From positions 248,001-312,000 of IMG/VR virus record IMGVR_UViG_3300045971_000577: a DNA stretch of 64,000 nucleotides. One strand, 5' to 3'. A program made the position numbers and the translations under genes. Position 1 is the stretch's first letter. The number at the start of each line of letters is the position of its first letter. The notes beneath the pieces were generated by a model. It was not told the origin of the DNA and did not search any database. It was given only the letters and a program-made list of their open reading frames with translations. Positions 4,773 to 27,622 of the stretch are shown here, piece by piece.

Positions 4773-4828
4773 AGAATGCGTTTTTTCAATTTTACGATTT
4801 GATTATTTTGAATTGCTGAATGCATTCT
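4773..4828 (-). ncRNA. Anticodon-stem-loop-like element, copy 1 (TCGTAAA, Tyr-like loop)
   Basis: TTTCTAA, then stem AGAATGC, ATTCAGCAA motif, inner stem-loop, GCATTCT. Confidence 0.5.
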
Positions 4829-4879
4829 TTAGAAATTTAGACTTCGTAACTGCGTTGTCTATGCAGCTACTATAACACC

Positions 4880-5101
4880 TTACCGGGCTGCTGTCAAATA
4901 GTTCGCCCACATTCTTTTCTTGGCCCAGGGCAGTTCACCGTCCACAGCAAGCCAGGCCGGCTTACCGTCAATAGTGCGATTATCTCTTCCAGTTGTACTA
5001 TAGCAACCATCGAAGCAGTGAGTGGGCGAACCATTCACCTTTTCCCAATTGTGGGTCAACTTACCACAGCATACACATCGTTTACGCATAGTTTCTTTCA
5101 T
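4880..5101 (-). CDS. Hypothetical Cys-rich protein
   Basis: ORF track; CVCC...CFDGC. Confidence 0.6.
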   Translation of the reverse strand: MKETMRKRCVCCGKLTHNWEKVNGSPTHCFDGCYSTTGRDNRTIDGKPAWLAVDGELPWAKKRMWANYLTAAR

Positions 5102-5366
5102 ATTGAATAGAATAGCTAAAGCCGCTTTTTCACCACAAATCCAATACCATAGTACCTACAGAATAAAGATGTATGCTTTATCCCTGCCTATAGTCGAAGG
5201 GCCAATTATTCCCTTACTTTAGCCCTCTGGCCCCCAAATACAGTGGTGACCAATTACGCTAATCGCTGTCTAAACTCCACCTCGGTCGATAACCGAAACT
5301 TGTTCGGGTGTTTCGAGTTCAGTTCAACGTGCTGGTATCGGCGTCGCCGTAGACGCTATTCTAACT

Positions 5367-5471
5367 TGGTGCCATGAGGATGGATTCGAACCATCACATT
5401 CGCTAGCCCGCACCGTTCCTCGAGACTGTTGCGGGCAAAATCACGTCCTCTACCGATTGGGATACTCTGGC
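5367..5471 (-). ncRNA. Atypical tRNA-like RNA with a long hairpin replacing the anticodon loop
   Basis: D-arm TCCCAATCGGTAGAGGA, T-arm GATGG-TTCGAAT-CCATC, ACCA end; inserted GCCCGCA/TGCGGGC stem. Confidence 0.6.
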
Positions 5472-5691
5472 TTATTCAAAATATAGAGGCTCCGGCGCCA
5501 CCGCATTCGCGACACTATTGCGCTTTTTTGGGGTGAAGTAACTTCACCAATACCGGTTTTATGCATATCACTGTATGGAAGGATTTTCACCTACAACACT
5601 GCACCTACTCAATATATCTAATACCATCCGTGGATCGTAGTGTAACATATTTTTTCAATGTCGTTCTGATAATTGAACTACATACATTATT

Positions 5692-5777
5692 TGGTGCCCC
5701 CTGGGAGACTCGAACTCCCAATGCCTTGCGGCGCCAGAACCTAAATCTGGTGCGTCTACCAATTTCGCCAAAGGGGC
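5692..5777 (-). tRNA. tRNA-Leu(TAG), long variable arm
   Basis: Loop TTTAGGT; GCC-GCAA-GGC variable arm; CCA. Confidence 0.95.
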
Positions 5778-5790
5778 AAATACTTGTCAC

Positions 5791-5819
5791 ATTATAGTAT
5801 GCTATTTATGAAAGATCAA
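5791..5819 (-). promoter_or_regulatory. Sigma70-type promoter with an embedded late-promoter motif
   Basis: TTGATC-N17-TATAAT with CATAAATA in the spacer. Confidence 0.6.
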
Positions 5820-5820
5820 T

Positions 5821-6006
5821 CTAACCGTTGTTGGTTTCTCTCTTTTTTGCACTGTGATTTATGATAATTATCGATCTGTCTTCAATCTCAAAGTCAATCT
5901 CATCACCCTCGAGCCAACCGTACTTCTTGATTAGCTCGGGCGGGAATGGGAGAATTACATCTCCGTTTTCATCTTCTTCGATTGTTACTGTCCAGGAGTT
6001 TTGCAT
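5821..6006 (-). CDS. AbrB/MazE/SpoVT-like DNA-binding protein
   Basis: GDVILPFPPELIKKYGWLEGDEIDFEIE pattern. Confidence 0.7.
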   Translation of the reverse strand: MQNSWTVTIEEDENGDVILPFPPELIKKYGWLEGDEIDFEIEDRSIIIINHSAKKRETNNG

Positions 6007-6158
6007 GGTAGTTCTAATCCTTCGTTTGGCTCAATACCAAAGTGTTCTTTGATTTGTAACACAAGGAGTGAATCGTACGGATTGCTACCTTGCATATGTG
6101 CATTTATCATTTTGCAACATTCTCTTACGGCATTCTTGATGACTTGATCTTCTTCCAT
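5985..6158 (-). CDS. Hypothetical protein (57 aa, MEEDQVIKNAVRECC...)
   Basis: Read manually; start coupled to upstream stop. Confidence 0.55.
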   Translation of the reverse strand: MEEDQVIKNAVRECCKMINAHMQGSNPYDSLLVLQIKEHFGIEPNEGLELPCKTPGQ

Positions 6159-6550
6159 TATCTTTCCAGCACCGTAATTGGCCTACTGATTTTTCTTGCA
6201 TAACGAATTGCTGCCCAGGTTCCACTACGCAAGATCTCATAATCCTGCAGCGGTGAACCAAACATGTATTCTACATCATCGACAATTTCATGATCTCGCA
6301 CAAGGTACGGAAGCGGGTCAAGATAGTGATCACACTTCTTCCATGCCCTGTTACTGCTTGCTTTAGGCGGATGACAAAATATTTCTACATCGGGGAAAAA
6401 TTCTCGTACGATGTCATGTGCCTCGGCATCGGCGCCAATGCAATCGCCATGATGAAATTCAGTAGGATTTAGTTCGTACAATTTCAGTGCGAATTGTTCT
6501 TTCTGATGTTGCGACATTCCCTTACGTGTTCCTGTAAATCCTACTTTCAC
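6158..6550 (-). CDS. SLOG/DprA-like Rossmann-fold protein
   Basis: VGFTGTR, HHGDCIGAD, SGTWAAIRYA motifs. Confidence 0.7.
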   Translation of the reverse strand: MKVGFTGTRKGMSQHQKEQFALKLYELNPTEFHHGDCIGADAEAHDIVREFFPDVEIFCHPPKASSNRAWKKCDHYLDPLPYLVRDHEIVDDVEYMFGSPLQDYEILRSGTWAAIRYARKISRPITVLER

Positions 6551-6849
6551 TTAAATGAATCTCCCCACATCAAAATCAACATGGTCGCATCGCTTTCCTT
6601 CTTGAAGAAGATTTCAGCGAAGTACATGGGGTTGTCAAGGTATTCGCGAATATAGAATTCGCCCTTGAAAGTTGTTTGCAACCACTTTGTAATCTCTACC
6701 CAATTCTCTGGTTGCTGAATAGCAGTGAATTTGATTGCGTAGGGAGACTTCACCGGCAACTTGGACAAGTCGGTAATCCAATATTTGGCAGGAGGAGAAT
6801 CATCCTTGCCTGCAACGGGATCAGACAGATTGTGCAATATGGAGGTCAT
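6547..6849 (-). CDS. Hypothetical protein
   Basis: ORF track, trimmed to ATG 6849. Confidence 0.6.
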   Translation of the reverse strand: MTSILHNLSDPVAGKDDSPPAKYWITDLSKLPVKSPYAIKFTAIQQPENWVEITKWLQTTFKGEFYIREYLDNPMYFAEIFFKKESDATMLILMWGDSFK

Positions 6850-7297
6850 ATAGTGCCTTAAAATAGTCAGGTGAAGTTGTTTTACCGTAATACTTATACC
6901 ATTCAGGTTTCTCACCCAGTCTCAGCATGATACGTTCAACATTTATTGTAATGTCGTCAGCAGTGGGTTGCCAATCGGTTATAATAAATTCGGTCGGAAT
7001 TCCGTAATAAAAGATTTTATTCGCATAGTGATGTTGAAGACTATAGTGTCGATTTTCGACCAGTTCTTGTGTGAGTGCTACATATCTGTTGTGCAGGAAT
7101 CGCATCTTATTATAGAAGAAACACACATGTCCTGCATTCAATGTGTAACGATCTGGAACACTGTCCAGCACATCGTCTAACATCTTTGTCTTCAGTGATC
7201 TACGAAGTGCTGCGGGAACCATCTTGAGTTCACGCCACTCAGCAAAAAGATGCTGATCGGCAAGGTCTTCCGGCCTTACCAAATTTACTCGTGTCAT
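6821..7297 (-). CDS. denV: Pyrimidine-dimer DNA glycosylase / endonuclease V
   Basis: MTRVNLV..LADQHLFAEWREL and YTLNAGHVCFFYNK resemble T4 DenV. Confidence 0.9.
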   Translation of the reverse strand: MTRVNLVRPEDLADQHLFAEWRELKMVPAALRRSLKTKMLDDVLDSVPDRYTLNAGHVCFFYNKMRFLHNRYVALTQELVENRHYSLQHHYANKIFYYGIPTEFIITDWQPTADDITINVERIMLRLGEKPEWYKYYGKTTSPDYFKALYDLHIAQSV

Positions 7298-7470
7298 TGA
7301 CAAAGATCCGTAATGCGGCGAATGGTACGAGCCTGCATATGAACGTCACCCTGATATGTGAAATAGATTTCAGTCAATGCGCGGACACGCTCAGCCAATG
7401 TCCTTGCTGTATCATCAGCAATCTCGTTATTCTGTGCAATTCGCTCAAGAAAAATATCACGTCTATTCAT
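7294..7470 (-). CDS. Hypothetical protein (58 aa)
   Basis: The longer ORF-track call runs through a tRNA; ATG 7470 preferred. Confidence 0.55.
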   Translation of the reverse strand: MNRRDIFLERIAQNNEIADDTARTLAERVRALTEIYFTYQGDVHMQARTIRRITDLCQ

Positions 7471-7569
7471 ATATGCTTTCTGTGTTATGTTGTTTGTGGT
7501 AGGGAACGATCCTACATTATTTCCACCGCACCATGAAGCAGAGGGTCGGGCCGCCTGGACAAACAAAAC

Positions 7570-7644
7570 TGGTGCGTCTGGAGGGAATCGAACCCTCGTC
7601 ATAGGATTTAGAATCCCGTACTCTAACCGCTGAGCTACAAACGC
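7570..7644 (-). tRNA. Amber suppressor tRNA (anticodon CTA)
   Basis: GCGTTTG/CAGACGC acceptor, ACCA; anticodon arm CGGGA-TTCTAAA-TCCTA; anticodon at 7609-7611. Confidence 0.85.
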
Positions 7645-7653
7645 GAATTTAAT

Positions 7654-7761
7654 GATGTGATCGAAGACGCTACTCTCCGACCTTGCCGCTGCCAACCTTA
7701 TAAATAGATGGCCTCGGATGCTCTTTCGAGCAGTGAATGTGCGCTTTACACTAATCACATC
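7654..7761 (-). ncRNA. Candidate ~108-nt structured RNA upstream of the suppressor tRNA
   Basis: Closing stem GATGTGAT/ATCACATC; TGCTC-GAAA-GAGCA; TCCGA/TCGGA. Confidence 0.5.
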
Positions 7762-7769
7762 GTATGTAC

Positions 7770-7797
7770 ATTATACAGTCATACTACTGCACGTCAA
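7770..7797 (-). promoter_or_regulatory. Sigma70-type promoter driving the small RNA and suppressor tRNA
   Basis: TTGACG-N16-TATAAT. Confidence 0.6.
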
Positions 7798-8111
7798 TCG
7801 GCGTGATTGTACAATTTCCACTTCTTGAAGAAGTTGCGATCTCGATTCTCAGTAATAGGCTGGGTGCAGATAGCACTATATCTCATTCCGTTATCAGGTT
7901 CATAGAACATGTAATATTGGATTCCACGTTCTTCCAGCTTCTCAGCAATGGATGCCAGATCATTCTCATCTTTGGCAGACAACAGGATCAAACTCGAAAT
8001 CCCCTAATTGTCCTGGAACTTCTTGCCTGCTTCATAACAGGCGTGCCCGATTTGAACGATCCTTTGAGCATGAGAAATATCCTCACGAATGAATGTGTAG
8101 ATGTAGCTCAT
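7794..8111 (-). CDS. Pth2-like peptidyl-tRNA hydrolase interrupted by an in-frame TAG (8004-8006)
   Basis: MSYIYTFIREDISHAQRIVQIGHACYEAG...N*GISSLILLSAKDE...FYEPD...SAICTQP; one frame on both sides of the TAG; ATGA-coupled start. Confidence 0.75.
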
Positions 8112-8470
8112 TTGAATGCTTCCTTACGAAGTTCTTGTGCAATCTTCCAGACAGCATCTTGCTCCGACGGAGTAAGCCAACTGTATAACACCGATCCGCG
8201 AACAGACCAGAGTGCGCTATTCAGCGAACCGAATGGTGCTGCACCGTTATCGAGCTTGACTTTGTTAGTGATGGGGAAGAATGACTTACGCAGACGTGAC
8301 TCAGCACCTTCGAGACCTTCGCCCCTCATAACGGAACGATAGATGCACAAAGCGGCAATATCAGCACTGGTAATGTTACGGAGAGCAGCTCGTGCTTTCC
8401 ATTTTGCCCGAGTGTCCGTGAAAACGGGTTGGGACTTTTCTTCGGTAACTTGATTTGTAAAACTAAACAT
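8108..8470 (-). CDS. Hypothetical protein
   Basis: ORF track; AAGGA RBS. Confidence 0.75.
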   Translation of the reverse strand: MFSFTNQVTEEKSQPVFTDTRAKWKARAALRNITSADIAALCIYRSVMRGEGLEGAESRLRKSFFPITNKVKLDNGAAPFGSLNSALWSVRGSVLYSWLTPSEQDAVWKIAQELRKEAFK

Positions 8471-8590
8471 GATTTATTCCTTAAAAATTGGTTTGAATGA
8501 AAACAAAATTGCAATGTGAACTTCAAACGTTCTTAAGAAGAATCAAAATAAACCTACATCATGGTAGTATCTCCGGTTGTTGTAACTGTA

Positions 8591-8796
8591 TTTATGAATT
8601 GTGCAGATCCTCCCAGTTACATGCTGGGCGTGCCACTGTCCAAAGGTGCAACACCAATGGCAAACACTGTTATACACAATTCATAAACACAGATTATCAC
8701 TATAAATGATAATACTAACCCTGTCCGGTATCGCGCTTGCCGGCCTCCTAGCTAAAGAACCAGGTGTACACTTATACTACAGGATATGTGTTTATG
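8591..8796 (-). ncRNA. Candidate structured RNA with two overlapping long helices
   Basis: 10-bp CATAAACACA/TGTGTTTATG and 13-bp TTTATGAATTGTG/CACAATTCATAAA share 6 nt. Confidence 0.45.
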
Positions 8797-8811
8797 ACTT
8801 TGATACAGCAA

Positions 8812-8878
8812 GAAAGGCAGTTGGGTTCGAACCAACAACATTCGCGCAGGACGCCTCTTCCCGTTGGGCTACACCTAT
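8812..8878 (-). pseudogene. Degenerate tRNA (D- and T-arms intact, anticodon arm lost, no CCA)
   Basis: GCC-CAACGGGAAGA-GGC and GTTGG-TTCGAAC-CCAAC. Confidence 0.55.
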
Positions 8879-8992
8879 TGCTATATCAGAGCGTTACTTC
8901 GATACATTGACCCACAGCACCTCTGGCTGATTCTTCCTTCTGGAAAAGAAGGCGTGCTCTATGAACACTACGGTATGTATCTCAGTAACTAA

Positions 8993-9919
8993 CTATAGCA
9001 GAGTCAAAGCTGTTCCGCAAGCTGAACAAAATTTGGCTGTTGCCTTATTTGTGTGGCTGCAGGTCGAGCACTTTTGGGTCGTTTTGACCGTAACTGGTGC
9101 AGCAACTTCAATTGCACCAACAACACCTGCCATACGAAGGATGATTACTTCGGACTTGGCTTCGGAGTTGAATCCGTAAACTGCTTGGAACGATTGCTCA
9201 ACCTTGGATCCCGGAACAGTGATACCTGCTTCGTTCACTTCGGGTGCAACATAGCTATCCATGGTAGGAGTAGATGCAGCAACGCTGTTGGAGAAAACTG
9301 CGTTCGAAGATTGCAAAGTTGCGCTGGTGGATGTTGCGTTGGCAGACATACCGCGCATGACACCCTTTGTCGCTGTGGCAGAAGACAAACTTCCGCCACC
9401 TGCTTCGCTGCTGTTGTAGGTAGCAGACTGTGTTGCATTAGTGGAACCATAGAACGGACCGTCACTGTAGGTATACTGGTCAAAGATTGACTTGCGATAC
9501 GGATGACGATAGCCATACCAGTATTCGTGATGATGAACAGTAGTTGTGATGGTTGGCTTTTCTTGTTCGAACCAATATTCGACACGAACAACACCGTCGT
9601 CAACCTTGATACCACGCGGGCCATCTTCGATTGCTGCGGTACGCTCGATGAACTTGAATGCGTTACCTTCTGTCATGTTGCCGTTGCGAATGAAACGCTT
9701 TAGCTCGACTTCGGAGTTTGCATTTACGATGATTTCTGTGCCGTCAAGGACGTCAGTACCATCGATGTGGAGTGTGAACTTTGCTCTGCGTGAATTTAGA
9801 TTTTTCACGAGGACGGTAAACTCACTACCAAACGGTAGGAGGACCAGGTCTTTTTGTTCACGAAGGATTTTGCCGTTGTGTTTGATTGCCACGGCCAGCT
9901 TATTTTTCATCATATTCAT
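8993..9919 (-). CDS. Phage hypothetical protein with C-terminal zinc ribbon
   Basis: CSTC...FCSACG at the C-terminus; Ser/Thr-rich linker. Confidence 0.8.
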   Translation of the reverse strand: MNMMKNKLAVAIKHNGKILREQKDLVLLPFGSEFTVLVKNLNSRRAKFTLHIDGTDVLDGTEIIVNANSEVELKRFIRNGNMTEGNAFKFIERTAAIEDGPRGIKVDDGVVRVEYWFEQEKPTITTTVHHHEYWYGYRHPYRKSIFDQYTYSDGPFYGSTNATQSATYNSSEAGGGSLSSATATKGVMRGMSANATSTSATLQSSNAVFSNSVAASTPTMDSYVAPEVNEAGITVPGSKVEQSFQAVYGFNSEAKSEVIILRMAGVVGAIEVAAPVTVKTTQKCSTCSHTNKATAKFCSACGTALTLL

Positions 9920-9969
9920 ATTTTCCTTTAAAACAGCACACAGAACAAGTGCTCAAAGTTTCAGTTCTG

Positions 9970-10554
9970 TTAGGTGCTACCCTGTGTAGCATTACTATTT
10001 ATATTTTTACAAAATCGTTCATGCCTTTTTATGTTACAAAATATTATGTTCTTCTTACCGCACCTAACGCATTCTATATATTTGGTGGGGCGAGATCTAT
10101 TAGAACATGCCTTAGAACAATAATATTCGTTGTATTGTCTTTTATCTCCTTTTGTAAAAATCTTAGAGAATGATACGCCGCAATAGCAGGTATACCTATT
10201 TGTTACTCTTTCTATTCGGCGCCCTAACAAAGATCTCTTAGCGATATGCGCTGCGGATTGTTTATACCCCGAAGTTCCTTCGCCACCGTCTGTTTTATTT
10301 CGGAGAATACCTGTACCAATATCTATTCGACCATACCACTGAATCATTCTGCGTTCAATCGCGAATGCACCTAACTCGGTGAGATTATTTTCTAATATCA
10401 ATATTAATGATTTATCCGGCGGTTGTATATGCTCGGTGCGGCTCTTTAGGTAAGCCCTGTTTCCCGAACCTTTACCGATATAATACGGTGTTCCGGCCTT
10501 TGCCGTTCGTGAATCTACTTTTCGTAAATACGCATAAACATAAAATGTTGTCAT
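9970..10554 (-). CDS. GIY-YIG-like homing endonuclease
   Basis: FYVYAYLR...TPYYIGKG; NKTDGGEG. Confidence 0.85.
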
Positions 10555-12952: not shown

Positions 12953-13203
12953 GTTTTCAAACTAACCTAAACGAACTGTTTGCATCCGGTAACCCATATG
13001 CGGTGGCAATAGCAGAGAAGATAAAGAATATCGACGATGCGTATGCTAATAAACTCATCACTGCGGATGAAGCTAAAGACCTTCTCAACGATATGAAAAC
13101 GGAAGAAGCATTAGTTGATCTTGCCAACAATTTGCAAATAAAACTCTATGTTCAGCAAACAATCGATAAGTTGATATTTCTTGTCGAGAATGTGATTTTT
13201 TAG
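12949..13203 (+). CDS. Hypothetical protein coupled to the lipoprotein
   Basis: ATGA overlap. Confidence 0.7.
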   Translation: MSFQTNLNELFASGNPYAVAIAEKIKNIDDAYANKLITADEAKDLLNDMKTEEALVDLANNLQIKLYVQQTIDKLIFLVENVIF

Positions 13204-13208
13204 TCATA

Positions 13209-13234
13209 AGAATAGGAACCGAAGTTCCTATTCT
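13209..13234. terminator. Hairpin terminator between convergent units
   Basis: Perfect 11-bp stem with a UUCG loop on the minus strand. Confidence 0.75.
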
Positions 13235-13500
13235 GGATTTTCTGTTGCCAGGCATTCCTGCCCCGTGGTTTACCGCTTTTTAGGCAGCAAGAGCCTCAGT
13301 GTAAAACGAATCATTTGCGTTTACTTTTTGTTTTCTTCGATTTACGGTCGTTGCTCACCGAGCGATAAGAAGCCTACTCAATACCCAGGCGATTCCGGAT
13401 CGGGCCCATAACTAAAACTTCACAAAAGGCTTAGTGGTGGACCCGGGGGGATTCGAACCCCCTTGTTGAATGTCTTTCTGTTTCCTACTTTACGCTGTTA
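13235..13500 (-). ncRNA. ssrA: Circularly permuted (two-piece) tmRNA
   Basis: Acceptor piece (T-arm, CGGGTCC-ACCA ending 13435) lies upstream of the 5' end GGGCCCG (13407); tag ANDSFYTEALAA* at 13280-13318; G3:U70; outer ends approximate. Confidence 0.85.
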
Positions 13501-13620
13501 TTTTCCTTAATTCTGATTCATAATAGTGTAGCAGACCTACAATAGTCATACGATCAAATCTGTTACCGTATCCTAAATGCCGTCTGTAGTAATCAATCTG
13601 TGATTCAATAAATGATTTAC

Positions 13621-18439: not shown

Positions 18440-18619
18440 TTATTCTCCTGCCAGCTCTTTCATTCTTTTTAGAATATCGTTCAACTTTGCACCATCCATT
18501 GCTCTGCAGGATGTAATGTTGGTTGGACGAAACGGTCTCCCCTCATCTGTTTCTTCAACGATGTCAAGGATACGAAAGAAATCTCTTACGAGCTGTTTTA
18601 GTTCTTCTTCGTTTGTCAT
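18440..18619 (-). CDS. Hypothetical protein (59 aa, MTNEEELKQLVRDFF...)
   Basis: Read manually. Confidence 0.65.
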   Translation of the reverse strand: MTNEEELKQLVRDFFRILDIVEETDEGRPFRPTNITSCRAMDGAKLNDILKRMKELAGE

Positions 18620-18622
18620 ATC

Positions 18623-18684
18623 AGTATGTGCTTTTTATTTTCAGAATGAATGAAATTTTTATTTAGGTTTGCTGAATACATACT
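18623..18684 (-). ncRNA. Anticodon-stem-loop-like element, copy 2 (CAT loop)
   Basis: AGTATGT/ACATACT stem, ATTCAGCAA motif, TTTCA-TTCATTC-TGAAA. Confidence 0.55.
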
Positions 18685-18693
18685 TTAGAAACT

Positions 18694-18767
18694 TGGTAGG
18701 GCTGCAGGGAATCAAACCCTGGTTGACCGGTTAAAAGCCGGATATTCTATCATTGAATTACAACCCC
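18694..18767 (-). tRNA. tRNA-Lys(TTT)
   Basis: Loop CTTTTAA; CCA. Confidence 0.9.
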
Positions 18768-19353: not shown

Positions 19354-19360
19354 AAAAACG

Positions 19361-21847: not shown

Positions 21848-21852
21848 AGGCT

Positions 21853-21947: not shown

Positions 21948-21952
21948 AATAT

Positions 21953-22029
21953 TGGCAAGGCAGGTGGGACTCGAACCCACGCAGTCATGGCTCAGAACCA
22001 CGCCACTCTTCCCCTTAAGCTACTGCCCA
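21953..22029 (-). tRNA. tRNA-Gln(CTG)
   Basis: Loop TTCTGAG; GCCA. Confidence 0.88.
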
Positions 22030-22036
22030 ACTGATT

Positions 22037-22111
22037 TGGCGTCCCTATGGGGAATCGAACCCCACTTACCGACGTGAAAGGCCGGCGTCCTAACCGATAG
22101 ACGATAGAGAC
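22037..22111 (-). tRNA. tRNA-Glu(TTC)
   Basis: Loop CTTTCAC. Confidence 0.93.
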
Positions 22112-22119
22112 ATTGTATT

Positions 22120-22196
22120 TGGCAAGCCGAGTCGGACTCGAACCGACGTATTCCTCGTTCAAAGCGAGGTCACTCTTCCCCTTAAGCTACCGGCCA
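22120..22196 (-). tRNA. tRNA-Gln(TTG)
   Basis: Loop CTTTGAA. Confidence 0.88.
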
Positions 22197-22248
22197 ATTG
22201 TTTCAAGTAGGAAGTTTTTTCATGCTTACCTACAAGCGCATGTTCTTC

Positions 22249-22324
22249 TGGAACCCGCATCGGGAGTTGAACCCGAGTTTACATCTTGAGAGGATGTCGT
22301 CCTATACCGTTAGACGATGCGGAT
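22249..22324 (-). tRNA. tRNA-Glu(CTC)
   Basis: Loop CTCTCAA. Confidence 0.88.
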
Positions 22325-22329
22325 ATAAA

Positions 22330-22407
22330 TGGTGCACCTGGCAGGACTCGAACCTGCAACGCACAACTTTTCAGGCTGCCGCTCTACGCGATTGGAGCTA
22401 CAAGTGC
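22330..22407 (-). tRNA. tRNA-Phe(GAA)
   Basis: Loop CTGAAAA. Confidence 0.9.
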
Positions 22408-22411
22408 ATAA

Positions 22412-22483
22412 TGGACCCACCGGAAGGATTCGAACCTTCGTAACTAACGTTCGTAGCGTCAGCACCTGTCCTCAGGCGGTGAG
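22412..22483 (-). tRNA. tRNA-Arg(ACG) with a minimal D-arm
   Basis: Loop CTACGAA; D-arm CCTG-AGGA-CAGG. Confidence 0.7.
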
Positions 22484-22484
22484 A

Positions 22485-22649
22485 TTAGAAGTATCTACCT
22501 TGAGTCTTACGACGCCAGAACTCTCGTTCTATGCGTTCTATTTCTTCCGGGGTAGACGGATTTCTCGATTTGATATATTGTTCAAGTTCTTGAGTGACAT
22601 GCGCCCCAGAGAAGAAATCCTTGAACCAAGCTATGACAGCAACTATCAT
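22485..22649 (-). CDS. Small protein, DUF3563-like (tentative), paralogue 1
   Basis: ELEQYIKSRNPSTPEEIERIEREF; read manually. Confidence 0.6.
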   Translation of the reverse strand: MIVAVIAWFKDFFSGAHVTQELEQYIKSRNPSTPEEIERIEREFWRRKTQGRYF

Positions 22650-22822
22650 TCGTGAAAATATGTAAAGATGTTATTTCTACGTCGTTCGTAAAACTGATGC
22701 TCTAGCCGATCGACATCTTCTGCCGATTGCGGGTTAGCCGAGGCGATGAAAACTTCGAGATTATCAAAATTCTGTCGGGACTTGAAAATGTCCTGAATGT
22801 ATTGAAATAATGTGCTTAACAT
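22646..22822 (-). CDS. Small protein, DUF3563-like (tentative), paralogue 2
   Basis: NLEVFIASANPQSAEDVDRLEHQF; ATGA coupled. Confidence 0.6.
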   Translation of the reverse strand: MLSTLFQYIQDIFKSRQNFDNLEVFIASANPQSAEDVDRLEHQFYERRRNNIFTYFHE

Positions 22823-22923
22823 AATGTTTCCTTAGTGTTTGTACTTATGTATTTATGACAATGCGTGCTGCATTGCAACAAAACATAGTGTAATCGCTAA
22901 GAACCTGCATGTCAATAAACCGA

Positions 22924-22997
22924 TGGTGGTCAGTACAAGAATCGAACTTGTGAAGATAGCTTATGAAACTACCGGTATACCACTTACCTAACTGACC
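22924..22997 (-). tRNA. tRNA-Met or Ile2 (CAT)
   Basis: Loop TTCATAA. Confidence 0.85.
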
Positions 22998-23003
22998 AAA
23001 TGG

Positions 23004-23079
23004 TGGTGCCAAGGACCGGATTCGAACCAGTGACGCGCAACTTTTCAGGCTGCCGCTCTACCAACTGAGCTACCGAGGC
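23004..23079 (-). tRNA. tRNA-Phe(GAA), two acceptor mismatches
   Basis: Loop CTGAAAA. Confidence 0.8.
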
Positions 23080-23087
23080 ATAAAATA

Positions 23088-23161
23088 TGGTGCGGGCTAG
23101 GGGAATCGAACCCCTGCGGTAAAGTTGGCAACCTTACATTCTACCATTAAATTAAGCACGC
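23088..23161 (-). tRNA. tRNA-Gly(GCC)
   Basis: Loop TTGCCAA. Confidence 0.88.
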
Positions 23162-23260
23162 ATTGTAACATTGAGATAGTTGAAGTAGTGTATGTGGAGT
23201 CGAACCAACCTTTAGTTCCCGGGTACACGATGCCCGCTTCAATCAGGCCTATCTCAAATA

Positions 23261-23352
23261 TGGCGGAAGTGGGCGGATTCGAACCCCCTAACCCTTGTTC
23301 AGGATCAAACAGTTTTCAAGACTGGGCTGCTCTCCAAGACAGTAGCACTTCC
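23261..23352 (-). tRNA. tRNA-Ser(TGA)
   Basis: Loop CTTGAAA; long variable arm; GCCA. Confidence 0.85.
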
Positions 23353-23970
23353 ATATAACTTTATAAAATCTTTCCCATATTTATCTATAACATATCTAAA
23401 TATAGGTTGCATATCTTTTTCATATAAAACTGTTACAGATGGATTGGCAGCTAGTTTAGCCTCCCACTGTTCAGATTTATATCCTTTTATTTCAATAAAA
23501 TTTCCATTAACTATAAAATCAGGAATGTAATTTCTATTCCTGTCATTCCATACATATGGCAATTTTGTGTTATTCTTCTGTATATTCGTTCCGTGATCTA
23601 AAGAATATATTACATAAGCCAATTCCCAACTACTGTCACAGAATATGCCTTTATACCAACCTTTCTTACCTCTACCCGATCCGTGTCTGTAACCACCAGT
23701 AGTTAATTTAGCCTTCTTACTGATTCTTTCTTTTCTTAGTTCTTCTAATTCGGGGGTAGATGCCCTGCCAGAGGTTGATCCTTTTATGCCTTTGTTCCAC
23801 GCTGTCTGCAACCCAGTCTTACCTGCATTCCAGGGAATAAATCCTTCATAAAAGCCGGATTTCCAATCTTTTATCTTGATTTTATGATTAGGATTTTCCT
23901 TGCAGTAAAGCTGATGTATTGAACATCCATTTACATTGGCTAAAATCCTCGAACAATAAATGCATTGCAT
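23305..23970 (-). CDS. PD-(D/E)xK (TnsA-like) homing endonuclease
   Basis: CDSSWELAY...YIPDFIV...IEIKGY; C-terminus encoded inside tRNA-Ser. Confidence 0.8.
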   Translation of the reverse strand: MQCIYCSRILANVNGCSIHQLYCKENPNHKIKIKDWKSGFYEGFIPWNAGKTGLQTAWNKGIKGSTSGRASTPELEELRKERISKKAKLTTGGYRHGSGRGKKGWYKGIFCDSSWELAYVIYSLDHGTNIQKNNTKLPYVWNDRNRNYIPDFIVNGNFIEIKGYKSEQWEAKLAANPSVTVLYEKDMQPIFRYVIDKYGKDFIKLYGSATVLESSPVLKTV

Positions 23971-23984
23971 CTATTATTTATCAG

Positions 23985-24024
23985 TCAAGACTGCTGCCGC
24001 TATGCCGATTCGGCTAACGTGTCC
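23985..24024 (-). pseudogene. Orphan 5' half of a tRNA-Ser(TGA)-like gene, cut at the anticodon
   Basis: GGACACGTTAGCCGAATCGGCATAGCGGCAGCAGTCTTGA followed by GATAAATA and the nuclease gene. Confidence 0.6.
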
Positions 24025-24094
24025 AAATAGTTCTCCATGCCCGAAAGCTAACAGTATGCCAAGGAGGTGGCGCAATTCTAATGTATTTATCTTC

Positions 24095-24172
24095 TGGTAC
24101 CCGGATAGAGAATCGAACTCTACATTTTTCCACTTGTAAGGAGGATGGCTTCACCAGCTGCACTCTCCGGGC
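24095..24172 (-). tRNA. tRNA-Val(TAC)
   Basis: Loop CTTACAA. Confidence 0.82.
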
Positions 24173-24413
24173 AAATCTTTCTCAACATAATGCGCCTAGG
24201 GCCGAGTAGGACACGGATCCCATGTTTGATTGTTGTATTCTAGCTTTTGCCAGGTTATTGTACTAGAACATCACGACGCTACATTAGGTAGGGGATTAGC
24301 CCTTTCTGCAACCTTGCACCTAACTCCGCTGCTCGATACCACATCTTGGTTTACATGAATAGAAACAGTTGCGTTATATATTCACAACACCAAGTCGTCC
24401 GGACAACAAATTT

Positions 24414-24489
24414 TGGTACCCCATATGGGATTCGAACCCATACACTCAGTGTTTGAGACTGATACGACTGCCAATTACGTCAACGGGGC
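24414..24489 (-). tRNA. tRNA-Leu(CAA), short variable loop
   Basis: Loop CTCAAAC. Confidence 0.88.
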
Positions 24490-24494
24490 AAATA

Positions 24495-24642
24495 AGCACA
24501 CTCTACGATTAGCTCCTATCCAGGCCTTCCCAGTTCAGCCAGGGCGTCAAGGGTCTCGTCCCCTACGGGATTAGATAGTCGGATATGGTTCCCCGACCAA
24601 GACGGACTGCTAATGCCTCCACACGGTTTGATATATTGTGCT
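24495..24642 (-). ncRNA. Candidate ~150-nt structured RNA
   Basis: AGCACA/TGTGCT, ATTAGC/GCTAAT, GTCGG/CCGAC, TCCC-GTAG-GGGA. Confidence 0.45.
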
Positions 24643-24673
24643 CCCCACAATCCGGCGTAGAGTGAATCAAAAA

Positions 24674-24749
24674 TGGAGTCCAGGTAGGGAATCAAACCCT
24701 AGTGCTTTAGTTTTGCAGACTAAGACAATTATCATTCTGTCACCTGGAC
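24674..24749 (-). tRNA. tRNA-Cys(GCA)
   Basis: Loop CTGCAAA; U73. Confidence 0.9.
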
Positions 24750-24755
24750 ATTATT

Positions 24756-24856
24756 TGGTCGGTGTAGTTGAACTCGCATCAACAAGCCGGGTCATGTCTT
24801 TTGTACATTATGCACAAGACCCGCTGAGGCTTCCTCAGTACCTAGGATATACACCA
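24756..24856 (-). ncRNA. Atypical tRNA-like RNA with CCA and an elongated central arm
   Basis: TGGTGTA/TACACCG-ACCA; GGGTC/GACCC; GTTGA/TCAAC arm. Confidence 0.55.
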
Positions 24857-24865
24857 GTATGAAAA

Positions 24866-24940
24866 TGGGCAGACGGTTAGGAGTTGAACCTAATATATCT
24901 CTTTCACAGAGAGATGTGTTGCCGTTACACTACACGCTGC
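24866..24940 (-). tRNA. tRNA-His(GTG), irregular acceptor stem
   Basis: Loop CTGTGAA; C73 and G-1. Confidence 0.75.
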
Positions 24941-25059
24941 ATTGAATAAATCGGGATGTTTGGCTAGGACCGGGAATCGAACCCTATTGCCGTGCCCCCA
25001 TCGGGCCAGTCCGCAGAGTTTTGGTTGCGAATTTAGATTGCTGAAGCCATCCTTTGAAA

Positions 25060-25215
25060 CTATCTAACGATAACCCACTTTGTGTCAAATGGTTTATCCT
25101 TTTCTTTTCTTTTGAAAATCTTCTTCATCTGTTTACGAAAAAGATCTTTCTCTCGTCCTACATCATGCTCGATGCAGGCTTTGTACATTTCACTAATGAG
25201 TTTACGTTCTTTCAT
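25060..25215 (-). CDS. Small basic hypothetical protein (MKERKLISEMY...)
   Basis: GGAGG RBS; ORF track trimmed. Confidence 0.55.
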   Translation of the reverse strand: MKERKLISEMYKACIEHDVGREKDLFRKQMKKIFKRKEKDKPFDTKWVIVR

Positions 25216-25244
25216 AATACCTCCAGGAGATATTTTATTTATGA

Positions 25245-25320
25245 TGGTACCCCAGATGGGATTCGAACCCACACACCTACGGTCTAAACGTAGTACGACT
25301 GCCAATTACGTCACCGGGGC
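25245..25320 (-). tRNA. tRNA-Leu(TAG), short variable loop
   Basis: Loop TTTAGAC. Confidence 0.88.
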
Positions 25321-25413
25321 AAAGAAAAATTCGGAATAGAAACAGTGTATTCCCCCTTGGAAATCTGTATATTCCTGTTGGTCTGTTGTGTGGCCACACA
25401 ACATTCCACGTTT

Positions 25414-25490
25414 TGGTGACCCTGCACGGGATTGAACCGCGTCTATTCTGGTTTTGGAGACCAGCGCACCACCATTTATGCGTCAGAGCC
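25414..25490 (-). tRNA. tRNA-Trp(CCA) with A8/C9
   Basis: Loop CTCCAAA; CCA. Confidence 0.88.
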
Positions 25491-25514
25491 ATATTTTATT
25501 TTATTATCATTGTT

Positions 25515-25601
25515 TGGCTCCAAAGGTAGGGATCGAACCTACGAAGGCTTGCGCCATATCCCGTTAACAGCGGGGACCGTTACCACTCCGGCCACTTTGG
25601 A
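25515..25601 (-). tRNA. tRNA-Asn(GTT) with a long variable arm
   Basis: Loop CTGTTAA; GGC-GCAA-GCC arm; U1-A72, G73. Confidence 0.85.
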
Positions 25602-25624
25602 ATTGTTCATATAATTTGCATGTC

Positions 25625-25820
25625 TTTTAATTCTTTATGCATTAGAATTGTTAATTTTTTATCTGCAGGAAATTGATTCCATTTAGCAGTATCTTTTTCT
25701 GTTTTATATCCTTTGATCTCAATAAACTCATCTGTCCCTGGCAGATAGAAATCCGGAGTGATCTCGTGCAAATCCTTGATATACTTTTTTCATGGGTACC
25801 TTTCTGTGTTAGTGGACATT
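25625..25820 (-). pseudogene. Remnant of a PD-(D/E)xK endonuclease with an in-frame TGA
   Basis: RYP*KKY...TPDFYL...FIEIKGYKTE resembles 23305-23970; ends approximate. Confidence 0.6.
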
Positions 25821-25851
25821 GCTATTGTATATGTTTGCACGTCTTTGTCAA

Positions 25852-25972
25852 TGGCGTCGCCCCAGGGAATCGAACCCCGACTGCTCCTTTATGAGTGGAT
25901 TGAATTTTGTTGCTGAACGTATCCTTTACAGGATCACTTTCGTTTAGCATGCTACCGTTACATTAAAGCGAC
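25852..25972 (-). ncRNA. tRNA(CAT)-like RNA with a ~50-nt insert containing the TTCAGCAA motif
   Basis: GTCGCTT/GGGCGAC-GCCA acceptor; D- and T-arms; CTCATAA loop after the insert. Confidence 0.6.
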
Positions 25973-25976
25973 ATGA

Positions 25977-26135
25977 TGGAGTCATCCTTCTACTATATAC
26001 GGCTATAAGACCAGTTAGAGATAATAGGAGACGACATTGATTGGTGGACCCTTAAGGTGTATAGTGTAGTGACTTCTTAATGCCCATTGATTGGCGGTCT
26101 AGAGGAAATATATCTTAGGGATCTCTATCCGGACC
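25977..26135 (-). ncRNA. Array of three CCA-terminated acceptor-stem minihelices
   Basis: 26092-26135, 26042-26085 and 25977-26035, each preceded by an ATCAAT spacer. Confidence 0.65.
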
Positions 26136-26142
26136 ATTGATT

Positions 26143-26218
26143 TGGTGGGAGTACTGGGATTCGAACCCAGACCAGTCGGATTAAGAGTCCGCTATGCAAC
26201 CTGTAACACCTCACTCCC
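26143..26218 (-). tRNA. tRNA-Lys(CTT)
   Basis: Loop CTCTTAA. Confidence 0.92.
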
Positions 26219-26468
26219 GAATATTTTGTGGTCGATACTTATAGCGACCAATAATTGCAAGACATCCGATGTTGACTGCATAATTTAGCAGCAACGGATA
26301 GTCTTTCTTAGGGATAATATAGACTGCGGTAAGAACTTCTCCAGCAAACCATAACCCTAACATCCAGGACGAAATGCCCCGGGAATGCTTTTGTTTATAG
26401 GATTGTATTGCTTGTGGTACTGCACACAAGGCAAGCATCATACTTCCTATCCAGCCAATAATTTCCAT
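26211..26468 (-). CDS. PQ-loop / SemiSWEET-like membrane protein
   Basis: IIGWIG..LALCAVPQ, SRGISS; three hydrophobic helices. Confidence 0.8.
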   Translation of the reverse strand: MEIIGWIGSMMLALCAVPQAIQSYKQKHSRGISSWMLGLWFAGEVLTAVYIIPKKDYPLLLNYAVNIGCLAIIGRYKYRPQNIRE

Positions 26469-26481
26469 AGATACCTTTCGT

Positions 26482-26556
26482 TGGCATCCTGTACGAGAGT
26501 CGAACTCGTCTCCTCTGCTTGAAGGGCAGGTCACCTCACCCGAAGTGGAACAGGAC
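26482..26556 (-). tRNA. tRNA-Glu(TTC) with C33 (a shifted register would give TCA)
   Basis: CCTGC-CCTTCAA-GCAGA. Confidence 0.65.
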
Positions 26557-26669
26557 ATAAAATACTATCTGCAGGGGAGTCGAACGCGCCACCCACTGTA
26601 CCATAGATTGGTACGATACACCAGATACCGACCAAGCGACCAATCTCGCTTATGCACGGTTGCAGAACT

Positions 26670-26747
26670 CGGTGCCTCCGAAAGGAATCGAACCTTACGT
26701 CTGCCGATTATCAGTCGGATGCTCTAAAACCATTGAGCTACAGAGGC
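26670..26747 (-). tRNA. tRNA-Ile(GAT)
   Basis: Loop CTGATAA; ends ACCG. Confidence 0.9.
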
Positions 26748-26766
26748 AATATATCAAAACTTTGTG

Positions 26767-26842
26767 TCTGGGATGCAGGATTCGAACCTGCGACCTCTCA
26801 CTTCCAAGGCGAGCCGTCTGACCTGACTGACAATAATCCCAG
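26767..26842 (-). tRNA. tRNA-Pro(TGG), CCA not encoded
   Basis: Loop CTTGGAA. Confidence 0.85.
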
Positions 26843-26912
26843 ACACAAAATTCGTCAACACTGTTCATCTCCAAAGGTGGGATGATACCATTTCATTATA
26901 CCCAGAATGTTA

Positions 26913-26986
26913 TGGTGCCCCAAGACAGAATCGAACTGCCGTTTTCTCCTTACAAGAGAGTTGTCCTACCACTAAACGATAAGGGC
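26913..26986 (-). tRNA. tRNA-Thr(TGT)
   Basis: Loop CTTGTAA by standard numbering. Confidence 0.75.
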
Positions 26987-27044
26987 AATAATAAATCAGT
27001 GTTCTTATTTTTCAATTAACAGTTGCAGAATAGATAAATATGTA

Positions 27045-27566
27045 ATGTTTAAACCTACCTGGCTATATGTAAAACAACACTCAAATACAAAATTATTGTA
27101 TTTTGGTAAAACCGTATCTAATCCTAACAAATATACCGGATCCGGTAAGGTATGGAAAAGACATTTAAAAATACATGGTAAAGAATATGTCCAAACTATA
27201 TGGTCAAAATTATTTACATCTAAAGATGAACTAAGTAATTTTGCAATAGCATTTTCCGAAATATTCGATATAGTTGAATCACCTATGTGGGCAAATCTTA
27301 TACCAGAGAATGGCATAGATGGCGGTGCACCAGGCAGAATTCAATCAATAGAAACAAAAAATAAAATAAGAAATTCTATCAACAATAGACCCAATTTTAA
27401 TCATCTAAAAGGTATTCCAAAATCGGATTCATTTAAAACAAATCACTCATTGTTAATGAAAAATAGGCCACAACTGCGATGCTGTTGTATATTATGCAGA
27501 CATGATATTTGCATAAACAAATTAGATGCACACCAAAACGGTAAACATTGTCTTACAAAAAATTAA
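27045..27566 (+). CDS. GIY-YIG-like homing endonuclease, antisense to the tRNA array
   Basis: PTWLYVKQH...LYFGKT...YTGSGKVW; GATAAATA upstream. Confidence 0.85.
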   Translation: MFKPTWLYVKQHSNTKLLYFGKTVSNPNKYTGSGKVWKRHLKIHGKEYVQTIWSKLFTSKDELSNFAIAFSEIFDIVESPMWANLIPENGIDGGAPGRIQSIETKNKIRNSINNRPNFNHLKGIPKSDSFKTNHSLLMKNRPQLRCCCILCRHDICINKLDAHQNGKHCLTKN

Positions 27567-27568
27567 AC

Positions 27569-27622
27569 AGGTTGCTTATTTTTACATTAACAGTGTAATT
27601 TTTAATTTGCAGAACGCAACCT
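27569..27622 (-). ncRNA. Anticodon-stem-loop-like element, copy 3 (GTT loop)
   Basis: AGGTTGC/GCAACCT stem, GTTCTGCAA motif, TTACA-CTGTTAA-TGTAA. Confidence 0.6.

What the first reader, a model, noticed from the sequence alone, without database searches (positions are those of the whole stretch)
4773..27622. Dispersed family of anticodon-stem-loop mimics with a conserved TTC(A/T)GCAA motif
Seen in sequence: three elements (4773-4828, 18623-18684, 27569-27622) share one layout. It runs TTTCTAA, a 7-bp stem, (A/G)TTC(A/T)GCAA, an A-rich linker, a stem with a 7-nt anticodon-like loop, an A-rich linker and the closing strand. The outer stem covaries: AGAATGC/GCATTCT, AGTATGT/ACATACT, AGGTTGC/GCAACCT. 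The loops differ like anticodons (GTA, CAT, GTT). Two copies start just after a tRNA CCA. A shortened GTT copy lies near 27000-27030. Inference: free-standing anticodon decoys that soak up anticodon nucleases, or an unnamed small-RNA class.
Basis: partly seen in the sequence, partly recalled or inferred. Interest (0 to 1): 0.75.

Follow-up and report, generated by a model that had tools for sequence, protein, structure and literature searches.

The report
Phage Y-RNA-like small RNA family
The three elements are real members of a widespread, unnamed family of about 60-nt phage RNAs that most likely partner the phage's Ro60-like protein, and they look strikingly like the orphan 'Class I' RNAs of Dictyostelium.

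Summary
Three minus-strand elements share the layout UUUCUAA, a covarying 7-bp stem, RUUCWGCAA, an A-rich inner region, the closing strand, then GA/GU. In 22 copies from related jumbo phages the stem pairs in 100% of cells, and 5 of 7 pairs show compensatory changes.

The elements are the short form of a larger family. Long forms carry the same stem and motif around a tRNA-like domain. Four long forms sit in tandem directly upstream of a DUF2828/vWA gene in this genome. That protein's predicted structure matches Ro60 over its full length. The RNA-protein link recurs in loci fetched by the protein alone, including Felix O1, a T4-like Citrobacter phage and a mycobacteriophage.

The most likely function is a Y-RNA-like partner of this Ro60-like protein, made from tRNA transcripts. 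Binding and expression are inferred, not shown.

The inner loops are statistically anticodon-loop-like (7 nt, C-U-N-N-N-A-A). The decoy idea is not excluded and not supported.

The Rfam model for Dictyostelium Class I RNA picks out these same elements. The scores are below its threshold, but the matches are specific. Published Class I features match: AAG start, short covarying stem, an adjacent ...ACAGCAA-type motif, CUGU end and about 60 nt.

The parts
4765..4835 (-). E1, short form. 5' flank TTTCTAA, stem AGAATGC/GCATTCT (4822-4828 / 4773-4779), motif ATTCAGCAA, A-rich interior, 3' flank GACTAAAT.
   Evidence: Model R1 72.4 bits. Rfam RF01414 gives a full-length sub-threshold hit at 4772-4827, 32.5 bits, E 6e-5 to 2e-4.
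4869..4897 (-). Sigma-70-like promoter about 34 nt upstream of E1 (TTGACA, 17 nt, TATAGT, with TG). E1 is not next to a tRNA and may be transcribed on its own.
   Evidence: Consensus scan, 11 of 12 matches. This is a pattern match only.
18615..18691 (-). E2, short form. Stem AGTATGT/ACATACT, motif ATTCAGCAA, inner hairpin UUUCA-UUCAUUC-UGAAA. An ORF start codon lies 3 nt after the stem (ORF 18440-18619).
   Evidence: R1 56.8 bits; sequence; ORF.
18697..18767 (-). tRNA with anticodon loop CTTTTAA (Lys-UUU type). Its CCA ends 2 nt before E2's flank.
   Evidence: Rfam tRNA 61 bits. ARAGORN missed it.
27561..27629 (-). E3, short form. Stem AGGTTGC/GCAACCT, motif GTTCTGCAA, inner hairpin UUACA-CUGUUAA-UGUAA. 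It starts 2 nt after tRNA-Asp CCA.
   Evidence: R1 71 bits; RF01414 29.4 bits, E 2.7e-4; fold.
26988..27030 (-). 5'-truncated copy: motif, CTGTTAA loop, 3' stem strand GAACACT, GATTTATTAT. It abuts tRNA-Tyr. A GIY-YIG-like ORF on the opposite strand (27045-27566) separates it from E3.
   Evidence: Sequence; Pfam GIY-YIG, weak, E 0.0046.
24945..25060 (-). Long form. Flank GTTTCAA, stem AGGATGG, motif CTTCAGCAA, an insert of about 77 nt with a T-loop-like GGTTCGATTCC, imperfect closing strand ACATCCC (5 of 7 pairs), then GATTTATT.
   Evidence: Sequence. The ortholog in L021 (G004) has a 6/7 stem and compensatory changes in an inner helix.
25852..25972 (-). tRNA-shaped member. It has an open acceptor stem with encoded CCA, a D arm and a T arm. 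Between the D arm and an anticodon-arm-like hairpin lies the module, closed by a GNNA loop: GTGATCCT-GTAA-AGGATAC, then GTTCAGCAA.
   Evidence: Fold. Three orthologs show covarying acceptor and D stems, tetraloops GTAA/GCCA/GTCA/GCAA and variable 7-nt loops. Neither ARAGORN nor Rfam calls it.

Best explanation
The elements are genes for short, Y-RNA-like noncoding RNAs.

What is shown:
- There is a conserved module: a 7-bp terminal stem that begins A-G and ends C-U, followed on the 5' side by single-stranded R/Y-U-W-C-N-G-C-A-A.
- This module defines a family that comes in several forms. The short form is about 55-65 nt, with a weak AU hairpin that usually has a 7-nt anticodon-like loop. Long forms hold a circularly permuted tRNA-like domain (T arm, closed acceptor-like hairpin, D arm), as in bacterial YrlA. 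There are also tRNA-shaped forms.
- Long forms lie in tandem directly upstream of, or just after, a DUF2828+vWA gene whose predicted fold is that of Ro60.

What is inferred:
- The RNAs are transcribed with the tRNA genes. E1 may use its own promoter.
- They are freed by tRNA-end processing.
- The stem-plus-motif module is the binding site of the Ro60-like protein.
- The variable module (anticodon-arm mimic or whole tRNA-like domain) recruits or occupies tRNA-recognising factors.
- The resulting RNP serves tRNA/RNA quality control or counter-defence during infection.
For: Covarying, strand-specific stem.

The family is present at 5-9 copies, all on one strand, in each of five related jumbo-phage records.

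Four tandem long copies lie at genome 236,536-237,564(-), ending 9 nt before the RBS region of the gene at 235,106-236,527.

That gene matches Pfam DUF2828+DUF7788 and PHROG 850 'RNA-binding protein'. Its AF2 model has pLDDT 79.5. The top 13 PDB matches are all Ro60/TROVE over the full length, E 2e-9 to 8e-5, TM 0.48-0.60. The top Swiss-Prot matches are Ro60 orthologs.

The tRNA-like inserts get sub-threshold Rfam YrlA hits: 27.8, 40.1 and 43.5 bits.

In 72 distinct loci fetched by the protein alone, there are 55 motif sites on the gene strand against 3 on the other. Of the 55, 44 have a 7/7 partner, and all 44 are followed by G.

The same module sits beside the homologous gene in Felix O1a (4 copies), Citrobacter phage Ci1 and mycobacteriophage Rumpelstiltskin, whose gp54 is annotated 'Ro-like RNA binding protein'.

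19 of 33 short copies abut a tRNA within 1-4 nt.

The phage also encodes RtcB and two RNA-ligase-family proteins, one about 2 kb from the Ro-like locus.

Published work: phage Ro60 binds Y-like RNAs encoded upstream of its gene (PMC12135203). The Felix O1-like Bas63 Ro60-like gp130 counters the Ppl defence, and its authors guessed that nearby 'tRNA genes' are Y RNAs (10.1101/2024.10.10.617714).
Against: There is no expression data. No RNA run was listed.

There is no binding data. The complex prediction was not folded.

The three window copies lie 15-40 kb from the Ro-like gene, not beside it.

The motif differs from the Ro-binding motifs of known Y RNAs (GGUCCGA, GNCGAAN0-1G).

About half of the protein-fetched loci show no module within 2.5 kb upstream.

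The inner hairpins are thermodynamically marginal.
Confidence: 0.65

Rival explanations
1. Free-standing anticodon-stem-loop decoys. The 7-nt C-U-N-N-N-A-A loop mimics an anticodon loop and titrates host anticodon nucleases. This could act with or without the Ro-like protein.
For: 7-nt loops are strongly enriched, with U at position 2 in 25 of 27 and A at position 6 in 24 of 27, while the central triplet varies: UUU, GUA, UGU, UUC, GAA, GUU. The loop CUUUUAA is kept while its stem covaries: UUCAA/UUGAA, UUUCA/UGAAA, UUUGA/UCAAA. The hairpin takes the anticodon-arm position in tRNA-shaped relatives. The phage carries RNA-repair genes. From general knowledge, Lys-UUU, Tyr-GUA and Asn-GUU tRNAs are known nuclease targets.
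Against: No nuclease or cleavage evidence exists. The most conserved parts (stem and motif) are unrelated to an anticodon arm. E1, the AUUGG and 9-nt-loop subfamilies, and the Felix O1 and mycobacteriophage short forms lack such loops. The stems are only 4-5 AU pairs. Triplets change between orthologous slots of close relatives, which also fits absence of constraint.
Confidence: 0.12
2. Cis-acting spacer structures of tRNA operons. They would guide or insulate RNase P/Z/E processing of neighbouring tRNAs, with no life as separate RNAs.
For: The spacing to flanking tRNAs is tight and fixed: about 9 nt on the 5' side and 10-11 nt on the 3' side. The AU-rich flanks are conserved.
Against: E1 and many copies have no adjacent tRNA. 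Arrays of up to eight stand upstream of the Ro-like gene without intervening tRNAs. A conserved 9-nt single-stranded motif is not needed for a spacer.
Confidence: 0.1
3. A DNA-level element: a promoter, a homing-endonuclease target or a recombination site.
For: The 3' half of some copies resembles TTGAAA, 16 nt, TATTAT. A GIY-YIG-like gene lies between E3 and a truncated copy.
Against: Compensatory stem changes with strand-specific G.U pairs. Strand bias of 55 to 3. The promoter-like reading would start transcription inside the next tRNA. The three full window copies are not called as promoters.
Confidence: 0.03

Closest known systems
Bacterial and phage Y RNAs: YrlA/YrlB (Rfam RF02553), Deinococcus Yrn1, Thermus phage phiLo Yrl1/2
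   Same: The 5' and 3' ends form a stem, with a conserved single-stranded motif next to its 5' strand. A second module is a circularly permuted tRNA-like domain (T arm, closed acceptor-like hairpin, D arm). Short partners without that domain exist, like YrlB. The genes lie in tandem beside a Ro60-fold gene on the same strand. [quoted passage not shown]
   Different: The motif is YUWCNGCAA, not GNCGAAN0-1G, CGAA or GGUCCGA. The protein is the DUF2828 branch, which Pfam does not call TROVE, so the 2014 survey did not cover it. Rfam YrlA scores are far below gathering (27.8-43.5 against 69 bits). Many copies are dispersed among tRNA genes far from the protein gene.
Dictyostelium Class I RNAs (Rfam RF01414)
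   Same: Length is about 60 nt and the sequence is AT-rich. A short terminal stem keeps its structure but not its sequence. A conserved motif lies directly 3' of the 5' stem strand: the Rfam consensus is CUUACAGCAA, while here it is AUUCAGCAA, UUACAGCAA or CUACAGCAA. There is an invariant AAG at the start and CUG(U) at the end, and an A-rich run before the 3' strand (PMC7919456). The dictyostelid-built model's top hits in six phage genomes are the very elements found here.
   Different: All scores are below the gathering score (up to 36 against 41.5 bits). Position 5 of the motif is often U here. The hosts are phages, with no DUSE promoter. The Class I partner known so far is the RRM protein Rnp1A. 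Whether dictyostelids have a DUF2828 protein could not be tested here.
tRNAs and tRNA-like pseudo-genes in phage tRNA clusters
   Same: The location and strand are the same, and the elements abut tRNAs. Some members have true T, D and acceptor arms. One such RNA is annotated 'tRNA-Pseudo-AAC' in Citrobacter phage Ci1.
   Different: The short forms lack D and T arms and a CCA. ARAGORN and the Rfam tRNA model do not call them.

Membership tests
Y RNA / YrlA-like (Ro60 partner RNAs) | Bound by a Ro60 protein | not testable with these tools
No experimental data exist.
Y RNA / YrlA-like (Ro60 partner RNAs) | Encoded within a few kb of the Ro60 gene on the same strand | tested here: inconclusive
   Met for the long forms in this genome and in many protein-fetched loci. 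Not met for the three window copies, which lie 15-40 kb away in the tRNA region.
Y RNA / YrlA-like (Ro60 partner RNAs) | Neighbouring protein has the Ro60 (TROVE HEAT-ring plus vWA) fold | tested here: met
   Foldseek top 13 PDB hits are all Ro60/TROVE over the full length. Swiss-Prot top hits are Ro60. The match is structural; Pfam names DUF2828/DUF7788.
Y RNA / YrlA-like (Ro60 partner RNAs) | Terminal stem formed by the 5' and 3' ends | tested here: met
   7-bp stem, 100% paired, 5 of 7 pairs compensatory; 44 of 55 in the unbiased set.
Y RNA / YrlA-like (Ro60 partner RNAs) | Ro-binding sequence GGUCCGA or GNCGAAN0-1G near the 5' end | tested here: not met
   The invariant motif is U-x-C-x-G-C-A-A. 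So this is not a member by sequence. It is an analogous motif at the analogous place.
Y RNA / YrlA-like (Ro60 partner RNAs) | tRNA-like domain (YrlA) scoring with RF02553 | tested here: inconclusive
   Long forms score 27.8, 40.1 and 43.5 bits against a gathering score of 69. The fold shows T arm, hairpin and D arm. The short window copies have no such domain.
Dictyostelium Class I RNA (RF01414) | Score at or above the Rfam gathering threshold (41.5 bits) | tested here: not met
   E1 32.5, E3 29.4, E2 no hit. Best relative 36 bits.
Dictyostelium Class I RNA (RF01414) | Short covarying stem joining the ends, about 60 nt, AAG start, CUGU end | tested here: met
   Invariant AAAG before and within the stem start and CTG after it. 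E3 ends CUGU; most others end CUGA. Lengths stem to stem are 54-62 nt. The feature list comes from PMC7919456. True RNA ends are unknown here.
Dictyostelium Class I RNA (RF01414) | 11-nt motif next to the 5' stem strand, with near-invariant T3, C6, C9, A10, A11 | tested here: met
   C6, C9, A10 and A11 are invariant here, as are U4 and G8. Position 3 is R or Y. UUACAGCAA is exact in genome copy B and in Felix O1.
Dictyostelium Class I RNA (RF01414) | DUSE promoter about 60 nt upstream; dictyostelid host | tested here: not met
   These are phage genomes. The elements follow tRNAs or a sigma-70-like promoter.
tRNA | Cloverleaf with D and T arms, recognised by ARAGORN or RF00005 | tested here: not met
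   There are no calls on E1-E3. Only the outer stem and one hairpin exist.

The most novel reading that the evidence does not exclude
These phage RNAs and the Class I RNAs of dictyostelid amoebae may be one RNA family: the cognate ligands of DUF2828-type Ro60-like proteins. In that case Class I RNAs are not unique to Dictyostelia. Their conserved stem and 11-nt motif would be a Ro-like protein binding site. The phage short forms would present an anticodon-arm mimic on that scaffold.
Probability: 0.3. Interest if true: 0.85.

Novelty: new variant of a known kind. Interest (0 to 1): 0.75.

Why it matters
Ro60-like DUF2828 proteins occur in at least 710 deposited phage genomes. One of them has been reported to counter a bacterial defence system, and its RNA partners were only guessed at.

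A defined RNA module (stem plus YUWCAGCAA) would do three things:
- It supplies those candidate partners in model phages (Felix O1, Bas63-type, cluster L mycobacteriophages) where binding and knock-outs are easy.
- It explains some 'pseudo-tRNA' annotations.
- It shows that phage tRNA clusters carry a second class of structured RNAs.

The unexpected match to Dictyostelium Class I RNAs concerns an abundant, developmentally important class reported as unique to dictyostelids (PMC7919456). It gives a concrete, testable hypothesis for their function.

Tried and rejected
Rfam at gathering thresholds finds nothing at the elements, so there is no known ribozyme or riboswitch there.

A sigma-70 promoter reading of the 3' half was rejected. 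The start would fall inside the next tRNA, and the full window copies are not called.

A terminator reading was rejected because there is no GC stem with a T-run.

My first idea for the T-arm-containing copies was tRNA introns or split or permuted tRNA genes. I dropped it when the outer stems and the YrlA-like order of arms became clear.

Complex prediction (protein plus E3 RNA) was not folded and gives no evidence.

Two searches for sequencing runs listed only DNA runs (pond and wastewater metagenomes) and no RNA run.

blastn against deposited phages found no close relative of the window.

AlphaFold DB cluster output had organism names masked, and the Avesson 2011 and Aspegren 2004 papers are not held. 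I therefore could not check whether dictyostelids encode a DUF2828 protein or which proteins co-purified with Class I RNA.

RF01414 gave no hit at E 0.05 or better on the Felix O1, Ci1 and five other loci.

The region 4638-4759 after E1 folds no better than shuffles.


Full report
CONTEXT

The window is positions 248,001-312,000 of a 369,145-bp virus record. The record has direct terminal repeats, is rated complete and has 45% G+C. DNA runs that hold it are pond metagenomes. The first 30 kb of the window carry 33 tRNA genes called by ARAGORN and a permuted tmRNA, all on the minus strand. No close relative is among deposited phages.

THE OBSERVATION

Read on the minus strand, the three elements share one layout:
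- UUUCUAA
- a 7-nt stem strand beginning AG
- R-UUCWGCAA
- an A-rich interior with a weak hairpin
- the closing strand ending CU
- then GA or GU

TTTCTAAAG and TTCWGCAA are both over-represented in the window. E3 begins 2 nt after the CCA of tRNA-Asp. E2 begins 2 nt after the CCA of a tRNA seen only by Rfam. E1 follows no tRNA. It has a sigma-70-like promoter match about 34 nt upstream.

Folding energies alone are unremarkable. The case for structure rests on comparison with homologues.

HOMOLOGUES AND COVARIATION

An exact-pattern scan of viral contigs returned 39 stretches. Twelve were obvious homologues, and further copies lay in the same loci.

In an alignment of 22 copies:
- The outer stem pairs in every cell.
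- Five of seven pairs show changes on both sides.
- The three G.U pairs fit only the tRNA-sense strand.
- Slid registers pair in 27-58% of cells.
- RNAalifold predicts the same helix independently.

A covariance model, R1, finds exactly the three window copies plus one long copy in this genome. It finds 5-9 copies, all on one strand, in each of five related records. Two of those records are complete genomes of 364 and 385 kb.

In 19 of 33 short copies the model match abuts a tRNA within 1-4 nt on one or both sides. The elements are therefore almost certainly co-transcribed with tRNAs.

THE WIDER FAMILY

Relaxing the pattern in the whole genome exposed other copies of the same stem-plus-motif module.

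Four lie in tandem at genome 236,536-237,564(-), 10-11 kb outside the window. Two more lie inside the window. These are long forms with inserts of about 85-210 nt.

In the copy nearest the downstream gene, the insert folds into a T arm, a closed acceptor-like hairpin with a GNRA loop, and a D arm. This is the circularly permuted tRNA-like domain that defines bacterial YrlA (PMC4201824). Rfam's YrlA model gives sub-threshold hits on it and on two distant homologues.

The window copy at 25852-25972 is the converse arrangement:
- It has a normal open acceptor stem with encoded CCA, a D arm and a T arm.
- The module is closed by a GNNA tetraloop and inserted ahead of an anticodon-arm-like hairpin.
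- Three orthologues show covarying acceptor and D stems and different 7-nt loops.

In a distant contig one member has the module stem in place of the acceptor stem of an otherwise complete tRNA-like RNA.

THE ASSOCIATED PROTEIN

The gene that starts 9 nt after the tandem array matches Pfam DUF2828 and DUF7788 (vWA) and PHROG 850 'RNA-binding protein'. An AlphaFold model built on 31 homologues has pLDDT 79.5. Its 13 best PDB matches are all Ro60/TROVE proteins aligned over the full length. They include Thermus phage phiLo Ro60, Xenopus Ro with Y RNA, and Deinococcus Rsr. Ro60 orthologues also head the Swiss-Prot list.

Orthologues in four related records have weaker R1 hits immediately upstream in three of them.

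For an independent test I fetched 80 loci by the protein alone, at 46-84% identity. In the 72 distinct upstream regions:
- The motif preceded by TAA and a 7-mer occurs 55 times on the gene strand and 3 times on the other.
- 44 of the 55 have a perfect partner within 300 nt, against 12-16 for shuffled or reversed stems.
- All 44 are followed by G.

Arrays reach eight members. About half of the loci show nothing, so the RNA genes are not always adjacent.

The protein is in 710 deposited phage records. The module flanks it in:
- Felix O1a, with three short forms and one long form inside the tRNA cluster
- Citrobacter phage Ci1, where one member is annotated as a pseudo-tRNA
- mycobacteriophage Rumpelstiltskin, whose gene is annotated 'Ro-like RNA binding protein'

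THE LOOPS

The inner hairpins are marginal in energy. Even so:
- A 7-nt loop gives the longest stem in 18 of 33 copies, against 3.7 in shuffles.
- 27 of 33 copies have at least 4 bp around a 7-nt loop, against a shuffled mean of 8 and a maximum of 15.
- The loop consensus is C (20/27), U (25/27), N, N, N, A (24/27), A (20/27), in a region that is only 14% C.

The loop CUUUUAA persists while its stem covaries, even in a phage whose Ro-like protein is only 50% identical. So the anticodon-loop resemblance is real in this clade.

It is not universal. E1, a 5-nt and a 9-nt loop subfamily, and the Felix O1 and mycobacteriophage short forms lack it. The central triplet changes between orthologous slots of close relatives. 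That fits either absence of constraint or diversification.

THE DICTYOSTELIUM LINK

A permissive Rfam search unexpectedly matched E1, end to end, to RF01414, the Class I RNA of Dictyostelium (32.5 bits).

I then searched whole genomes. This model was built from dictyostelid sequences only. In this genome its top two hits are E1 and E3. In five related records its 16 best hits all coincide with R1 hits, with E-values of 1e-6 to 4e-3 per genome. All scores are below the gathering score of 41.5 bits.

The alignment to the consensus shows a 6-bp stem, then CUUACAGCAA, a variable A/U-rich region, an A run, the closing strand and UG.

The published description matches point for point:
- length of 42-65 nt
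- a short terminal stem kept by compensatory changes
- an 11-nt motif next to the 5' strand with near-invariant T3, C6, C9, A10 and A11
- conserved AAG start and CUGU end

Class I RNAs are reported as unique to Dictyostelia (PMC7919456).

DUF2828 proteins do occur in eukaryotes. I could not determine whether dictyostelids have one. Shared ancestry, or shared recognition by homologous proteins, therefore remains a hypothesis.

MECHANISM

Shown: the family, its module, its strand, its several forms, its neighbourhood with tRNAs and with a Ro60-fold gene, and the phage's RNA-repair genes (RtcB and two RNA-ligase-family genes).

Inferred by analogy with Ro60/Y RNA systems (PMC4201824, PMC12135203):
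- The module binds the Ro60-like protein.
- The tRNA-like or anticodon-arm-like module engages tRNA-recognising factors.
- The RNP acts in RNA quality control or counter-defence.

The last point is in line with the report that Bas63 gp130, a Ro60-like protein next to a tRNA cluster, counters the Ppl defence system (10.1101/2024.10.10.617714).

No expression or binding data could be obtained.

VERDICT

Its centre of gravity is a Y-RNA-like partnership with a divergent Ro60 protein, not a free decoy.

The family is a new variant of a known kind. The possible cross-kingdom link to Class I RNAs raises its interest.

Noticed in passing
window 13189-13535 (-): Permuted (two-piece) tmRNA gene, tag ANDSFYTEALAA. 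Rfam tmRNA_permuted scores 89.6 bits.
   Followed up: no
window 7570-7644 (-): tRNA with anticodon CTA (amber suppressor type; ARAGORN labels it Pyl). This raises the question of TAG read-through or recoding in this phage.
   Followed up: no
window 18697-18767 (-): A good tRNA (Rfam 61 bits, loop CTTTTAA, Lys-UUU type) that ARAGORN missed.
   Followed up: partly
window 24876-24945 (-): His-type tRNA-like gene (loop CTGTGAA) whose acceptor stem pairs poorly. Rfam aligns only model positions 7-64.
   Followed up: partly
window 27045-27566 (+): GIY-YIG-like ORF (weak Pfam hit) on the opposite strand, lying between E3 and a 5'-truncated copy of the element. This looks like an insertion that split or displaced a copy.
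   Followed up: partly
G000 genome 78235-79362, 143668-144114, 239676-240197: RtcB and two RNA_ligase-family genes. The last lies about 2 kb from the Ro-like gene and its RNA array, recalling rsr-yrl-rtc RNA-repair loci.
   Followed up: partly
L064 5744-5957 (+): Sub-threshold match to archaeal-type RNase P RNA (46.6 bits, E 3.4e-10) in a phage contig, next to tRNAs and a DUF2828 gene.
   Followed up: no
L141 5012-5125 (Citrobacter phage Ci1, OR515478.1 77205-77318): A feature annotated 'tRNA-Pseudo-AAC' is a tRNA-shaped RNA. It carries the module hairpin CAAACT-GATA-AGTTTG followed by ATTCAGCAT.
   Followed up: partly
L071 1843-1950 (+): A member in which the module stem replaces the acceptor stem of an otherwise complete tRNA-like RNA. 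ARAGORN calls it tRNA-Asn(att) and Rfam tRNA scores 47.5 bits.
   Followed up: partly
L051 / G005 79667-79713 (-), and G002 51256-51288 (+): A miniature copy (stem, motif, about 10-nt loop) lies directly before the ribosome-binding site of the Ro-like gene. It could be an autoregulatory binding site.
   Followed up: no
window 4638-4759 (-): A 120-nt stretch between E1 and the next ORF is closed by GTTGTAG/CTACAAC. It folds no better than shuffles (z -1.3).
   Followed up: yes
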